A stretch of 64,000 nt of DNA from Octopus sinensis (lineage: Eukaryota). The translations under genes were made by a program, and so were the position numbers. Position 1 is the first letter of the stretch. Each line of letters starts with the position of its first letter. Positions 10,457 through 12,754 of the stretch are shown piece by piece. The notes beneath the pieces were generated by a model. It made no database searches and was not told where the DNA came from. It saw only the letters and a program-made list of their open reading frames with translations. The stretch lies in contig NC_043003.1 in the NCBI RefSeq assembly GCF_006345805.1, positions 88,102,001 to 88,166,000 on the forward strand. Reading direction: 5' to 3'.

Positions 10457-10524
<68 letters not shown>

Positions 10525-10606
10525 GGTCCCGAGTTGAGTCGGGGTTAACCACAGTAAATAAGGTACTCAATACATAGCAGAGTAAATTAACTTATTTTAT
10601 AGAAGG

Positions 10607-10657
10607 AGCTTCTACAGGACTAGTACTGTTTCATTCAAAAGAAATCATCAGGAAGCT
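10607..10657 (-). ncRNA. Type I hammerhead ribozyme (E1 left arm)
   Basis: Minus strand reads AGCTTC-CTGATGA-TTTC TTTT GAAT-GAAA-CAG TACTAGTC CTG-TA/GAAGCT. Stem I is 6 bp, the core is intact, and the cleavage triplet is GUA. Confidence 0.85.
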
Positions 10658-10959
10658 AGGTGACAAGAATAGTTTTGGCATTTATACATTTAGGCAGATT
10701 TAAAGTGGTGGTGGTGGGGGACTTTTTGGGATAGGCATGGCGCAAACTGTCTTTCTTAGGAGAGTGGTCAAAAGAATCAGTGATAAAGTAGATAAAAGAA
10801 TAAATAGAATAAAGTTTTAGGTAAAAAAGAAGACTATCACTTATATATATATACATATATATATATACATACATACATATATATATATACACCCATATAC
10901 ATACATATACGTACACACCCATACACATACTCATACATACACACATACATCCATACACT

Positions 10960-11005
<46 letters not shown>

Positions 11006-11130
11006 AATACACACACACACATACATGCCAACATGCAAGCACATGCACACATATATCTACACACATATATATAAAAAAGAATATACACCCCCATACACAC
11101 ACGCTCACATATATATATACACACATATAT

Positions 11131-11163
<33 letters not shown>

Positions 11164-11297
11164 CATATATACATACATATACATATGTATATACATGCAC
11201 ACATATACACACCCATTTCTTCCCTCATTTTATTTTATTTTTATTTTGACTGGTGTAAGTATATATGTGTATGTATATGTAGGTATATACGTACGTG

Positions 11298-11344
<47 letters not shown>

Positions 11345-12014
11345 GTATATATATGGACTAGTTTTCTGTGTGTGTATAGATGTAAGTATGTGTATGCGTG
11401 TAGATAAGAATCTGTAGGTACGTGTACGTATGTGTATATACGTGCATGTATGTATATGTATGTGTGTAGGTAGGTATATGTAGGTATGCTTTTATGTACA
11501 CGTGTATGCGTGCAAATATGTACTTAAAAGCGTATGGATGCATATGTATGTTTATATGCACAAATGTCTGTATATAGGCATATGCGTCTATATATGCGGG
11601 CAGATGTTCATGTGTGTTTATGTGTATTGAAGTACATTTATATATGTGGTTTTGTGTGGACATAGTTATGTGTACGTTTATGTGAAAGTCGGTACACTTA
11701 TGTATGTATGAATATGTCTACTTGTGTGTGTATATGTATGTGTATACATAGAACACGTGCGTTTGTGTATGTGTATGAGTGTGCGTGTGAGTGCGTGTGT
11801 GAGTGTTTGTGTTCGTATCAGTGGGAAGAAAGATAGAAAGGAAGGGAGAGGGGCAATAAATGGTTTATTTAGGCCGGCCAGCTCCCTCGGGAGGGTCTTA
11901 CTTCAGTGCCGGCCTCGTAGGTCAAGGTCAAAATAAAAATAAAAATAAAAATAAAATAAGGTAAGAAATGGGTGTGTATATGTGTGCATGTATATACATA
12001 TGTATATGTATGTA

Positions 12015-12079
<65 letters not shown>

Positions 12080-12192
12080 ATATATATATGTGAGCGTGAG
12101 TGTATGGGGGTGTATATTCTTTTTTATATATATGTGTGTAGATATATGTGTGCGTGTGCTTGCATGTTGGCATGTATGTGTGTGTGTGTATT

Positions 12193-12240
<48 letters not shown>

Positions 12241-12355
12241 AGTGTATGGATATATGTATATGTGTATGTATGAGTATGTGTATGGGTGTGTACGTATATG
12301 TATGGATATGGGTGCATATATATATATATATATTATATGTATGTATGTATGTGTG

Positions 12356-12398
<43 letters not shown>

Positions 12399-12603
12399 AT
12401 ATATATGTATATATATATAAGTGATAGTCTTCTTTTTTACCTAAAACGTTATTCTATTTATTCTTTTATCTACTTTATCACTGATTCTTTTGACCACTCC
12501 CCTAAGAAAGACAGTTTGCGCCATGCCTACCCCAAAAAGTCCCCCACCACCACCACTTTAAATCTGCCTAAATGTATAAATGCCAAAACTATTCTTGTCA
12601 CCT

Positions 12604-12654
12604 AGCTTCCTGATGATTTCTTTTGAATGAAACAGTTCTAGTCCTGTAGAAGCT
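12604..12654 (+). ncRNA. Type I hammerhead ribozyme (E1 right arm); predicted cleavage after A12648
   Basis: AGCTTC-CTGATGA-TTTC TTTT GAAT-GAAA-CAG TTCTAGTC CTG-TA/GAAGCT. Confidence 0.85.
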
Positions 12655-12754
12655 CCTTCTATAAAATAAAATATATATATATATAAACTGGTATTTTAAT
12701 TATAAAAGGATGAAAGTAAATAGTAAATACTTTCTACCTTGCTACCTTGGACTT

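What the first reader, a model, noticed from the sequence alone, without database searches (positions are those of the whole stretch)
10521..12670. Foldback element family (E1, E2) with two outward-facing hammerhead ribozymes, one on each strand
Seen: E1 (10521-12670) and E2 (54759-61210) are non-coding elements built from long inverted arms packed with (TA)n/(TG)n. Near the outer end of each arm is a complete 51-nt type I HHR with a 6-bp stem I, CUGAUGA, a short stem II, GAAA, stem III with a CTAG/ACTAGT palindromic loop, and a GUA cleavage site. The four HHRs differ at only one loop base, while adjacent arm sequence differs visibly between E1 and E2 (roughly 10% plus an indel, by eye). Both elements have the same asymmetry: a ~70-nt extension (ending ...GGGACCTACA) on the left arm only, and the right arm ending at ...CTATAAAATAA. 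Both sit in (TA)n. Known: Penelope-like elements carry type I HHRs in pseudo-LTRs that are often inverted at the 5' end, and described animal retrozymes are tandem same-polarity HHR repeats. Inference: this is a non-autonomous PLE-mobilised family whose whole foldback unit is copied. A transcript from either strand would be a long hairpin ending in a self-cleaving motif, which differs from described retrozymes.
Basis: partly seen in the sequence, partly recalled or inferred. Interest (0 to 1): 0.85.

Follow-up and report, generated by a model that had tools for sequence, protein, structure and literature searches.

The report
Head-to-head Penelope-type retroelement insertions
Two copies of a non-coding, microsatellite-rich mobile element in an octopus-like genome carry the published insertion signature of Penelope-like retrotransposons (an inverted partial copy, a one-sided tail, a TA-repeat target and a hammerhead-like motif near each 3' end), so the finding is real but largely ordinary.

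Summary
E1 (10521-12670) and E2 (54759-61210) are real, related and independently inserted: their flanks are unrelated and both sit in (TA)n. Each consists of a ~1.4-kb non-coding unit on the + strand plus an inverted, 5'-truncated copy of that unit on its left. The truncation points differ: about 0.73 kb is kept in E1 and about 1.23 kb in E2. Only the inverted copy has a 70-71-nt 3' tail. All four arms carry the same 51-nt motif with a complete hammerhead core, a 6-bp stem I and a stem III with a palindromic loop. Helix II is only 3 bp closed by U•U. Rfam does not recognise the motif, but it also misses the hammerhead of a bona fide Penelope-like element (PLE), so that negative says little. 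The motif is no better conserved than the 55 nt around it. Arms within one element are 4-10 times closer to each other than to the other element, so the foldback is made at each insertion and is not copied whole. An ORF-bearing PLE in the same window (48093-45507, minus strand) shows the same layout. In a read-through transcript the motif would be fully base-paired with the other arm. Verdict: a non-autonomous PLE-type family, a new member of a known kind. Ribozyme activity is unproven.

The parts
10447..10520 (.). (TA)n flanking E1 on the left. It is either the target microsatellite or a 3' tract added at insertion.
   Evidence: Read directly.
10521..10591 (-). E1 3' 'tail': a 71-nt extension present only on the inverted copy. 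It ends in an AC-rich stem-loop, CCCGACUCAACUCGGG, followed by ACCUACA.
   Evidence: Alignments and fold. Three differences from the E2 tail.
10592..11250 (-). E1 inverted, 5'-truncated copy of the unit. It keeps the 3' ~660 nt and joins the main unit through a TGAC microhomology at 11247-11250.
   Evidence: blastn: 10592-11247 matches 12669-11936 at 86%. MAFFT of the four units.
10607..10657 (-). Hammerhead-like motif, E1 inverted copy. Predicted cleavage is 3' of A10613. The loop variant ACUAGU is a 6-nt palindrome.
11248..12670 (+). E1 main unit, about 1.42 kb. In order: a 5' TG-rich complex block, a central unique hairpin block (about 11800-11925), an A-rich run, microsatellites, a 3' unique block of about 250 nt, and the short 3' end ...CTATAAAATAA.
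12604..12654 (+). Hammerhead-like motif, E1 main unit: AGCUUC/CUGAUGA/U-UUC-UUUU-GAA-U/GAAA/CAG-UUCUAGUC-CUG/U-A/GAAGCU. Predicted cleavage is 3' of A12648, 22 nt before the short 3' end.
54759..54828 (-). E2 3' tail, 70 nt, on the inverted copy only.
54829..55984 (-). E2 inverted, 5'-truncated copy. It is longer than in E1 and reaches the position equivalent to 56354 in the main unit.
   Evidence: blastn: 54829-55415 matches 61210-60596 (91.7%), and 55434-55984 matches 56916-56354 (93.5%). MAFFT.
54845..54895 (-). Hammerhead-like motif, E2 inverted copy. Predicted cleavage is 3' of A54851.
55985..56916 (+). E2 main unit, 5' part. From 56111 onward it is collinear with E1 from 11247. Positions 55985-56110 are TG-rich and are either a further 5' extension of the unit or filler.
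56917..60597 (+). Nested LINE, not part of the family. It has a 930-aa ORF with an endonuclease, RVT_1 and a PHD-like finger, and an (ATG)n tail. It inserted into a (TA)n run of the E2 right arm.
60598..61210 (+). E2 main unit, 3' part, ending at the short 3' end ...CTATAAAATAA followed by (TA)n.
61144..61194 (+). Hammerhead-like motif, E2 main unit. Predicted cleavage is 3' of A61188.
45507..48093 (-). Comparator in the same window: a degraded ORF-bearing Penelope-like element ('PLE-B'). It has N-terminal, RT and GIY-YIG remnants. A PLE-type minimal hammerhead (min-HHR) lies at 45554-45599, about 52 nt before its short 3' end, and the element is followed by TATATATATA.
48094..48162 (+). Inverted 46-nt copy of the PLE-B 3' end (48094-48139) plus a ~23-nt tail (48140-48162), followed by AATATATATA. 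This is the same main-copy/inverted-copy-with-tail layout as E1 and E2.
   Evidence: The tail is also present after the O. sinensis copy (L001 11029-11060).

Best explanation
E1 and E2 are two independent insertions of a non-autonomous, non-coding retroelement unit of about 1.4 kb, mobilised in trans by a Penelope-like element (PLE) reverse transcriptase/GIY-YIG endonuclease.

Inferred mechanism:
1. The unit RNA is transcribed from inside the element.
2. A PLE protein binds its conserved 3' region, meaning the invariant terminal ~106 nt plus the tail with its AC-rich stem-loop.
3. The protein nicks both strands of an AT-rich/(TA)n target.
4. It primes reverse transcription on both strands from two alternative internal start sites. 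One lies about 22 nt and the other about 92 nt downstream of the hammerhead-like motif.
5. One cDNA becomes the full unit and ends at the short site.
6. The other becomes an inverted copy that carries the 70-nt tail. It is 5'-truncated at a variable point and is joined to the unit by microhomology (TGAC in E1).

On this model the foldback, with one outward-facing motif on each strand, is a by-product of insertion and not the transposing unit.

The 51-nt motif is best read as a PLE-type type I hammerhead with a complete catalytic core and a dimer-competent palindromic loop 3 but a very weak helix II. Any cleavage would need dimerisation and/or protein assistance, and it may be dispensable for insertion.

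Shown: the anatomy, the independence of the two insertions, the pattern of arm similarity, and the same layout in an ORF-bearing PLE in this window. Inferred: mobilisation in trans, both-strand priming, the two start sites, and ribozyme activity.
For: 1. Architecture. Each element is a main unit plus an inverted 5'-truncated copy, with different truncation points in E1 (about 11247) and E2 (55984), a tail on one side only, and (TA)n on both sides.
2. This matches published PLE features. Craig 2021 (PMC8557442) describes an inverted 5'-truncated copy adjacent to the 5' end, a 30-40-bp tail often at one end only, and (TA)n targets. Frangieh 2024 (PMC11167929) shows that the anole PLE PAc cleaves and extends both DNA strands at AT-rich sites, that reverse transcription starts at two internal sites in an AC-rich stem-loop 85-92 nt downstream of the hammerhead cut, and that the tail is the stretch between the two sites. 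In E the long end lies 92 nt from the predicted cut and ends in an AC-rich stem-loop.
3. Arm similarity. Within-element divergence is 0.8-2.1% and between-element divergence is 7.8-9.9%. Every E1/E2 difference is shared by both arms of an element.
4. Internal control. PLE-B in the same window has RT and GIY-YIG remnants, 579 homologues carrying RVT_1/HTH_animal/DUF8422, and 82.6% nt identity to an Octopus sinensis copy. It has a minimal hammerhead (min-HHR) about 52 nt before its 3' end, a TA-rich flank, and an inverted 46-nt 3' fragment carrying a ~23-nt tail that the main copy lacks.
5. Motif. It has a complete core, a 6-bp stem I and a 4-bp stem III with a CUAG/ACUAGU palindrome. The predicted homodimer adopts the double-hammerhead geometry with an intermolecular helix III (-25.2 and -27.6 kcal/mol). 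The chance expectation at this strength is below 0.0025 per window.
6. The Rfam negative is uninformative, because the hammerhead of the ORF-bearing O. sinensis PLE is not detected either.
Against: - Only two copies are available. No further copy was found in about 93 kb of related cephalopod DNA, in metagenome or viral contig scans, or through searches with translated E segments.
- No autonomous PLE with a matching 3' end was found. PLE-B shares no sequence with E outside the hammerhead core.
- No direct-repeat pLTR is present in either copy.
- The tail is 70 nt, against the published 30-40 nt.
- Helix II is 3 bp with a U•U pair where PLE hammerheads normally have G10.1-C11.1 and a long helix II (PMC4209133). 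The monomer hammerhead fold is a minor conformer.
- There is no covariation, because the four copies are nearly identical.
- E1 could also derive from an E2-like foldback by an internal deletion at the TGAC microhomology.
- The (TA)n could be a tract added at insertion, not a target, and no empty site is available to decide.
Confidence: 0.7

Rival explanations
1. The foldback itself is the mobile unit. A long inverted-repeat element is copied or moved as a whole, either as a Foldback/MITE-like or Helitron/Helentron-like DNA element or as a hairpin RNA. E1 is then a deletion derivative of an E2-like copy.
For: - Both copies have the same left/right asymmetry and the same outer ends.
- The tail ends in a small hairpin a few nt from the terminus, which superficially resembles a Helitron 3' end.
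- The E1 inner junction lies at a 4-nt microhomology that would also fit a deletion.
- Insertion in (TA)n is compatible with an A^T target.
Against: - The ends are not symmetrical: there are 70 extra nt on one side only.
- There is no 5'-TC or 3'-CTRR (the terminus reads ...CCTAC), and no recognisable target-site duplication.
- All substitutions that separate E1 from E2 are present in both arms of an element. Under whole-unit copying this needs continuous arm-to-arm conversion in the master lineage.
- The inner breakpoints differ between copies.
- The same layout is seen for an ORF-bearing PLE in the window, where the inverted piece is only 46 nt and clearly a by-product.
Confidence: 0.1
2. 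The element is a retroposon mobilised by non-PLE machinery, for example one of the abundant LINEs in this window. The hammerhead-like motif is then a chance or decayed resemblance with no function, and the inverted copies arise from twin priming or later rearrangement.
For: - No Rfam hammerhead hit.
- Helix II is essentially unstable and the fold z-score is about 0.
- The motif is no more conserved than its neighbours.
- LINE copies are numerous in the window.
- In a Gb-sized genome a few chance motifs of this kind are expected. This is an extrapolation.
Against: - Twin priming inverts a different part of the template. It does not duplicate the 3' end on both sides, and here both arms contain the same 3' terminus.
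- There is no poly(A) or LINE-like (ATG)n tail, and no similarity to the LINE 3' end.
- A complete core, a 6-bp stem I and a palindromic loop 3, placed in sense orientation 22 or 92 nt from the two alternative 3' ends of an element that also has a one-sided tail, an inverted copy and a (TA)n target, is the PLE arrangement and has a very low joint chance probability.
- Rfam also misses the control PLE hammerhead.
Confidence: 0.1
3. The origin is PLE-type, but the present high similarity between arms reflects ongoing gene conversion or repair between arms of an old foldback, and not simultaneous synthesis. On this view the truncation difference between E1 and E2 is a later deletion.
For: - Long inverted repeats are prone to conversion and deletion.
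- Divergence along the unit is mosaic: 2.5% in the 5' block, 11% in the central block, 8-10% in the inner 3' block and 1% in the terminal block. This shows that processes other than uniform decay have acted.
Against: - The 3.7-kb LINE inserted in one E2 arm has not been removed or copied to the other arm.
- Arm-private substitutions and indels exist, for example a 13-nt deletion in the E2 left arm only.
- The mosaic pattern is equally well explained by template switching between subfamily RNAs or by constraint on the ends.
Confidence: 0.1

Closest known systems
Penelope-like element (PLE) insertion architecture: partial tandems or inverted 5'-truncated copies with a one-sided 'tail' (Craig et al. 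2021, PMC8557442; Frangieh et al. 2024, PMC11167929)
   Same: An inverted 5'-truncated copy abuts the 5' end of the main copy. The extension is at one end only. The target is (TA)n/AT-rich. A sense-strand hammerhead lies upstream of two alternative 3' ends, and the distal end sits in an AC-rich stem-loop about 92 nt from the cut site (85-92 nt in PAc). The same layout is seen in PLE-B of this window.
   Different: There is no RT/GIY-YIG ORF and no direct-repeat pLTR in either copy. The tail is 70 nt, not 30-40. The body is mostly microsatellite. The autonomous partner was not identified.
PLE minimal (type I) hammerhead ribozymes (Cervera & de la Peña 2014, PMC4209133)
   Same: Type I topology, a complete conserved core, a short stem I (6 bp), a palindromic loop 3 and a predicted dimeric (double-hammerhead) active form. 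Paired motifs on opposite strands a few hundred bp apart were already reported there.
   Different: Helix II is 3 bp (two A-U and one G-C) closed by U•U, where PLE hammerheads have a long helix II with G10.1-C11.1. Helix III is longer (4 bp plus an 8-nt loop) than the 0-2 bp typical of min-HHRs. There is no covariation data and no activity data.
Animal non-LTR retrozymes (Cervera & de la Peña 2020, PMC7229834; Li et al. 2026 bioRxiv 10.64898/2026.07.22.740005)
   Same: Non-autonomous, non-coding, carry a type I hammerhead, and are proposed to be PLE-derived or PLE-mobilised.
   Different: Retrozymes are 170-400-nt units in same-polarity tandem arrays that give circular RNAs. E is a single ~1.4-kb unit with one motif near its 3' end, with no tandem copy and no second same-strand site to release a monomer.
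Non-autonomous PLE derivatives such as MRC1 of Chlamydomonas (Craig et al. 2021, PMC8557442)
   Same: ORF-less elements that show PLE-type insertion structures and are expected to share only their 3' ends with an autonomous family.
   Different: Those form pLTRs and head-to-tail multicopies and belong to the hammerhead-less Chlamys clade. For E, no 3'-end similarity to an autonomous element could be shown.
Foldback (FB) elements, MITEs and Helitron/Helentron non-autonomous elements. This comparison rests on my own knowledge of these families, not on a database test.
   Same: Long inverted arms with internal simple repeats, a small hairpin near one terminus, and insertion in TA-rich DNA.
   Different: The termini are asymmetric, there are no TC...CTRR ends, and there is no recognisable target-site duplication. 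The arm-similarity pattern and the variable inner breakpoints argue for synthesis at insertion.

Membership tests
Hammerhead ribozyme (type I, PLE-type) | Conserved core: C3 U4 G5 A6 N7 G8 A9, G12 A13 A14, A15.1-U16.1, H17 | tested here: met
   CUGAUGA ... GAAA ... U-A is present in all four copies, with H17 = A.
Hammerhead ribozyme (type I, PLE-type) | Helices I and III flank the core, with open ends at helix I | tested here: met
   Stem I is AGCUUC/GAAGCU (6 bp). Stem III is A-CAG/CUG-U (4 bp) with an 8-nt loop.
Hammerhead ribozyme (type I, PLE-type) | A stable helix II with the G10.1-C11.1 closing pair (PMC4209133) | tested here: not met
   Helix II is UUC/GAA, 3 bp, closed by U•U, at -0.1 kcal/mol. 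For comparison, the O. sinensis PLE copy has A•C at the equivalent position and the window copy has G-C.
Hammerhead ribozyme (type I, PLE-type) | Palindromic loop 3 or 15.2-16.2 positions that allow a dimeric active form | tested here: met
   The loop contains CUAG (ACUAGU in the E1 left arm). The cofold minimum-energy structure is a double hammerhead with an intermolecular helix III. However, in that structure UUC pairs with the core GAA, a competing register.
Hammerhead ribozyme (type I, PLE-type) | Match to the Rfam hammerhead covariance models at gathering score | tested here: not met
   No hit. Hammerhead_3 scores 11.4 bits against a 48.5-bit gathering score. The control PLE hammerhead also fails, so this test has little power for PLE-type motifs.
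Hammerhead ribozyme (type I, PLE-type) | Covariation supporting the helices | tested here: inconclusive
   There are four copies with one loop difference, so nothing varies in any helix.
Hammerhead ribozyme (type I, PLE-type) | Site-specific self-cleavage | not testable with these tools
   This needs in vitro transcription or mapping of RNA ends.
Penelope-like element (autonomous) | A single ORF with a telomerase-like RT and a GIY-YIG endonuclease | tested here: not met
   E1 and E2 have no such ORF. Their only long ORFs are microsatellite read-throughs or the nested LINE. E is therefore at most a non-autonomous derivative.
PLE-type insertion (autonomous or non-autonomous) | An inverted 5'-truncated copy adjacent to the 5' end of the main copy | tested here: met
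   Present in both copies, with different truncation points.
PLE-type insertion (autonomous or non-autonomous) | A short 3' extension ('tail') present at one end only | tested here: met
   A 70-71-nt tail on the inverted copy only, in both elements. It is longer than the published 30-40 bp.
PLE-type insertion (autonomous or non-autonomous) | pLTR, a direct repeat formed by a partial tandem copy | tested here: not met
   There is no direct repeat of the 3' block within or next to either element.
PLE-type insertion (autonomous or non-autonomous) | An AT-rich or microsatellite target | tested here: met
   (TA)n lies at all four outer junctions. Whether it is a target or an added tract cannot be told without an empty site.
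PLE-type insertion (autonomous or non-autonomous) | A 3' end shared with an autonomous PLE of the same genome | tested here: inconclusive
   No similarity to PLE-B or PLE-A in the window, or to five cephalopod PLE loci. The host genome itself could not be searched.
Animal non-LTR retrozyme | Same-polarity tandem repeats of 170-400 nt, each with a hammerhead | tested here: not met
   One motif per 1.4-kb unit. The two motifs of an element are on opposite strands.
Helitron/Helentron | 5'-TC and 3'-CTRR termini with a subterminal 3' hairpin, and no long terminal inverted repeats | tested here: not met
   The termini read TTATTTTATAG... and ...GGGACCTAC. Only the hairpin is present.

The most novel reading that the evidence does not exclude
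E may represent a distinct kind of hammerhead-bearing PLE parasite that is neither a tandem retrozyme nor a pLTR remnant. On this reading it is a single-unit, ~1.4-kb, microsatellite-filled element. Its hammerhead has kept a perfect core and a dimerisation loop but has lost helix II stability, so it cleaves only in trans-dimers or when clamped by the PLE protein. Its obligatory head-to-head insertion would create long hairpin loci whose read-through transcripts silence the family, because the motif is sequestered in double-stranded RNA.
Probability: 0.12. Interest if true: 0.55.

Novelty: new member of a known kind. Interest (0 to 1): 0.3.

Why it matters
If the reading holds, E1 and E2 are clean, easily parsed examples of the PLE insertion signature in a non-autonomous element, sitting next to an ORF-bearing PLE with the same signature. 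That has three uses:
1. It helps annotate cephalopod genomes, where such foldbacks break assemblies and are usually left as 'unknown' repeats.
2. It can test in vivo the both-strand priming and two-start-site model that so far rests on one in vitro system (the anole PLE PAc).
3. It bears on whether a hammerhead with a defective helix II is tolerated because cleavage is dispensable for PLE-type mobilisation.

It does not open a new class of element or ribozyme.

Tried and rejected
- **Rfam.** I ran it on the whole window, on E1 and on an 86-nt slice. There was no hammerhead hit; the hits were microsatellite 'miRNA' noise and a SNORD102 resemblance (19 bits). I rejected the snoRNA reading because the D-box position reads CUGU and the motif is only 51 nt. 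The control on a bona fide PLE hammerhead was also negative.
- **tRNA scan.** No tRNA or tRNA-like head was found.
- **More copies by exact DNA scans.** I scanned metagenome contigs (twice) and viral contigs (twice) with exact motif, upstream and tail strings and found nothing.
- **More copies through spurious ORFs.** I searched the 5.8-billion-protein collection with translations of the unique blocks. There were no hits in two searches.
- **Exact look-up of the LINE ORF.** Not on record.
- **Related cephalopod DNA.** About 93 kb around PLE homologues (L001-L005) contains no E blocks.
- **Segmental duplication of E1/E2.** Rejected, because the flanks are unrelated.
- **Local Pfam on the PLE-B fragments.** No hits. 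Identity was established instead through the homologue search and nucleotide identity to O. sinensis.
- **Helitron, FB and twin-priming readings.** Considered and set aside, as explained under the rival explanations.
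Full report

Yes, in its main points. blastn of the window against itself shows that E1 (10521-12670) and E2 (54759-61210) are related to each other and internally inverted. 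The 24-nt string CTGATGATTTCTTTTGAATGAAAC occurs exactly four times, once near the outer end of each arm and always reading outward, with none expected by chance.

My own hammerhead descriptor (stem I >=5 bp, CUGANGA, helix II >=3 bp, GAAA, helix III >=1 bp, UH) finds the four 51-nt motifs. Markov-chain random sequences matched to the window give 0.01 hits per window at that threshold. They give none in 400 at the observed strength. The left-only extension of 70-71 nt, the common right end ...CTATAAAATAA and the (TA)n at all four outer junctions are visible in the alignments. The flanks of E1 and E2 are otherwise unrelated, so these are two insertions and not a local duplication.

Three details of the observation need correcting.
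- E2 is not purely non-coding. Positions 56917-60597 are a nested LINE with a 930-aa endonuclease/RVT_1/PHD-like ORF and an (ATG)n tail. It inserted into a (TA)n run of the right arm, and other copies lie elsewhere in the window.
- The motif is not a 'complete' hammerhead. Helix II is only UUC/GAA, closed by a U•U pair, and is worth -0.1 kcal/mol. The hammerhead fold (-7.3 kcal/mol) is about 4% of the ensemble, and the fold is no more stable than shuffled sequence.
- The conservation is not specific to the motif. The last 106 nt before the short end are invariant except for one loop base and one base upstream of the motif. That stretch is 40 nt upstream of the motif, the 51-nt motif and 15 nt downstream. 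The motif is no better conserved than the other 55 nt (p=1), whereas the terminal 106 nt as a whole are less diverged than the inner block (p=0.015).

**2. Anatomy**

Aligning the four arms after removing the LINE shows one basic unit, read on the + strand from the right-hand parts. It starts at GACTGGTGTAAG (E1 11248, E2 56111). In order it contains:
- a TG-rich complex 5' block;
- a central unique block with a GC-rich hairpin;
- an A-rich run;
- about 450 nt of microsatellite;
- a 3' unique block of about 250 nt containing the motif;
- the short end ...CTATAAAATAA.

The left-hand parts are inverted copies of the 3' portion of this unit, and they are truncated at different inner points. In E1 the inverted copy keeps about 660 nt plus the tail and is joined directly to the start of the main unit across a TGAC microhomology (11247-11250). 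In E2 it keeps about 1,155 nt plus the tail, ending at 55984, which corresponds to 56354 in the main unit. In both elements the tail is on the inverted copy only. It ends in a small AC-rich stem-loop (CCCGACUCAACUCGGG) followed by ACCUACA.

**3. Who copied what**

In the inner 3' block the two arms of one element differ by 0.8-2.1%, while E1 and E2 differ by 7.8-9.9%. All of the E1/E2 substitutions are present in both arms of an element.

If a foldback were copied as a whole, differences between left and right arms of the master would be inherited (left arms alike, right arms alike). None is seen. If both arms are synthesised from one template at each insertion, the observed pattern follows directly. 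Together with the different inner breakpoints, this argues that the foldback is generated at insertion. An internal deletion in E1 plus arm-to-arm conversion remains a possible, less economical alternative.

**4. Match to known biology**

The literature describes exactly this layout for Penelope-like elements (PLEs).
- Craig et al. [quoted passage not shown] They also report a 30-40-bp tail often present at one end only, and (TA)n as a preferred target for some clades.
- Frangieh et al. 2024 (PMC11167929) worked with the anole PLE PAc. They showed in vitro that it cleaves and extends both DNA strands at AT-rich sites. Reverse transcription starts at two internal RNA sites in an AC-rich stem-loop, 111-118 nt into the ORF, with the hammerhead cut at +26. 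That places the start sites 85-92 nt downstream of the cut. The tail is the sequence between the two starts. Hammerhead mutants still insert, and the ribozyme needs the protein to cleave.
- Cervera & de la Peña 2014 (PMC4209133) already noted paired minimal hammerheads 100-700 bp apart on opposite strands.

In E the two alternative 3' ends lie 22 and 92 nt downstream of the predicted cut, and the distal one ends in an AC-rich stem-loop.

**5. An internal control in the same window**

While scanning ORFs I found a degraded ORF-bearing PLE on the minus strand, at about 48093-45507 ('PLE-B'). It has an N-terminal domain, RT motifs (YGLPKTHK..PLRPIVS; RYVDDTF; VYRKPTFTGRYLNFNSH) and a GIY-YIG endonuclease with inner cysteines (CVYSISCSCGRLYKGET...DEHRKA).

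The local Pfam copy misses these fragments. A homologue search, however, returns 579 proteins with RVT_1, HTH_animal (PF26215) and DUF8422 (PF28514), including an Octopus sinensis protein at 63% identity. The O. sinensis locus L001 matches window 45507-47301 at 82.6% nucleotide identity. The window is therefore from an octopus-like cephalopod.

PLE-B has these features:
- It carries a PLE-type minimal hammerhead (min-HHR). The O. sinensis copy reads GACAC-CUGAUGA-A-AGCUG..CAGCC-GAAAC-GU-U|GUGUU. The window copy has a G16.2-to-A change.
- The hammerhead lies about 52 nt upstream of the short 3' end (...AAATGTAAATAATGT, 45507), which is followed by TATATATATA.
- At its 5' side sits an inverted 46-nt copy of that same 3' end (48094-48139, + strand). 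This copy continues into a ~23-nt tail (TTCTCATCTCTTAAATATAGAAC) and then AATATATATA.
- The tail is absent from the main copy, but it is present after one of the two O. sinensis copies.

This is the E1/E2 layout in miniature, in an element whose PLE identity does not depend on the hammerhead. A further comparator, L005, holds two PLE copies head to head with 99.5% identical arms.

**6. The motif itself**

In favour of a hammerhead:
- every core nucleotide is present;
- stem I has 6 bp;
- stem III has 4 bp, counting the A15.1-U16.1 pair;
- the loop is palindromic (CUAG, or ACUAGU in one copy);
- the predicted homodimer forms the double-hammerhead geometry with a long intermolecular helix III (-25.2 to -27.6 kcal/mol);
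- it sits in the position and orientation expected for a PLE hammerhead.

Against:
- helix II is far weaker than in described PLE hammerheads, which have 6-8 bp and G10.1-C11.1;
- a competing register pairs UUC with the core GAA;
- no Rfam model matches;
- there is no covariation.

The Rfam result carries little weight, because the hammerhead of the ORF-bearing O. sinensis PLE is also not detected at E<=10. My reading is that the motif descends from a PLE hammerhead (probability about 0.75). Its catalytic competence is doubtful: about 0.3 for any cleavage as a dimer or with protein, and lower as a monomer.

**7. The 'hairpin ending in a ribozyme' idea**

In the minimum-energy fold of the full + strand E1 RNA, 50 of the 51 motif nucleotides pair with positions 10607-10657 of the other arm. 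A read-through transcript would therefore bury the motif in a perfect duplex. The motif could fold only in a transcript that starts inside the main unit, which is what the unit model expects.

**8. What could not be done**

No collection available here contains the host genome as DNA. Exact-string scans, searches with translated E segments and about 93 kb of related cephalopod sequence yielded no further E copy and no autonomous partner. The family therefore rests on two copies. Copy number, the distribution of breakpoints, the nature of the (TA)n (target or added tract) and ribozyme activity remain open.

**9. Verdict**

The PLE-related interpretation is supported, by the published PLE signature and by an internal control. 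The claims of whole-foldback copying and of a hairpin-borne active ribozyme are not supported. This is a new, non-autonomous member of a known kind of element, with a hammerhead-like motif of uncertain activity. Interest is modest.

Noticed in passing
window 45507-48162: A degraded ORF-bearing Penelope-like element ('PLE-B', minus strand). It has N-terminal, RT and GIY-YIG remnants broken by frameshifts and stops, a minimal hammerhead at 45554-45599, and a short 3' end at 45507 in TA-rich DNA. An inverted 46-nt 3' fragment plus a ~23-nt tail lies at 48094-48162. It is 82.6% identical in nucleotides to an Octopus sinensis copy (L001 9275-11029).
   Followed up: yes
window 48305-49255 (minus strand): A second PLE-like fragment ('PLE-A'). 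It has an RT thumb-like piece (DKFRPYRKPNEKLSYI...) and a GIY-YIG domain without the inner cysteines (GIVYGGKV...YTGASENSFKTRFYSHRNS), preceded by a CxC...Cx5C motif. It belongs to a different family from PLE-B. The identification rests on motif recognition only.
   Followed up: partly
window 49581-50555: A cluster of inverted and permuted repeats at about 84% identity: 49581-49674 matches 50251-50158, 49723-50007 matches 50545-50265, and 50012-50145 is a palindrome. The block order is permuted between strands, as expected for cDNAs of a tandem or circular template. One copy has a hammerhead-descriptor hit at 50202-50252 (+), ACAUG-CUGAGGA-...-GAAA-C-CA-G-UC|CAUGU, where 0.01 is expected per window. 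Its mirror copy has a decayed stem I. Rfam gives no hit. It may be a second, retrozyme-like PLE derivative.
   Followed up: partly
window 56917-60597; also 1-1160, 19434-21887, 30240-33530, 41736-44515, 52094-53344: An abundant LINE family (endonuclease, RVT_1, PHD-like finger, (ATG)n tail and a GC-rich SINE-like 3' module). The copy nested in E2 is 98.5% identical to the one at 19434-21887, so the family was active after E2 inserted.
   Followed up: partly
window 11872-11915 and 56765-56812 (also 55532-55579, minus strand): The central unique block of the E unit contains a GC-rich hairpin whose outer stem differs between E1 (GGCCGGC/GCCGGCC) and E2 (GGCCAGC/GCTGGCC) by a paired G-C to A-U change. 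The fold z-scores are only -1.5 to -2.1. It may be a structured RNA element of the unit.
   Followed up: partly
E unit, alignment: E1-versus-E2 divergence is mosaic: 2.5% in the 5' TG-rich block, 10.7-11.9% in the central block, 7.8-9.9% in the inner 3' block, about 1% in the terminal 106 nt and 4% in the tail. The 5' block differs from the central block at p=0.0007. This suggests recombination between subfamilies or constraint on both ends. It is unexplained.
   Followed up: partly
window 26277-26376: A run of 100 N (an assembly gap) inside a LINE-rich region.
   Followed up: no
L005 8045-11714: In a related cephalopod assembly (ENA ERZ21867824), two PLE copies lie head to head, with 1,746-bp arms that are 99.5% identical and a 178-bp spacer. 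This is a coding example of the same foldback-by-insertion architecture.
   Followed up: partly
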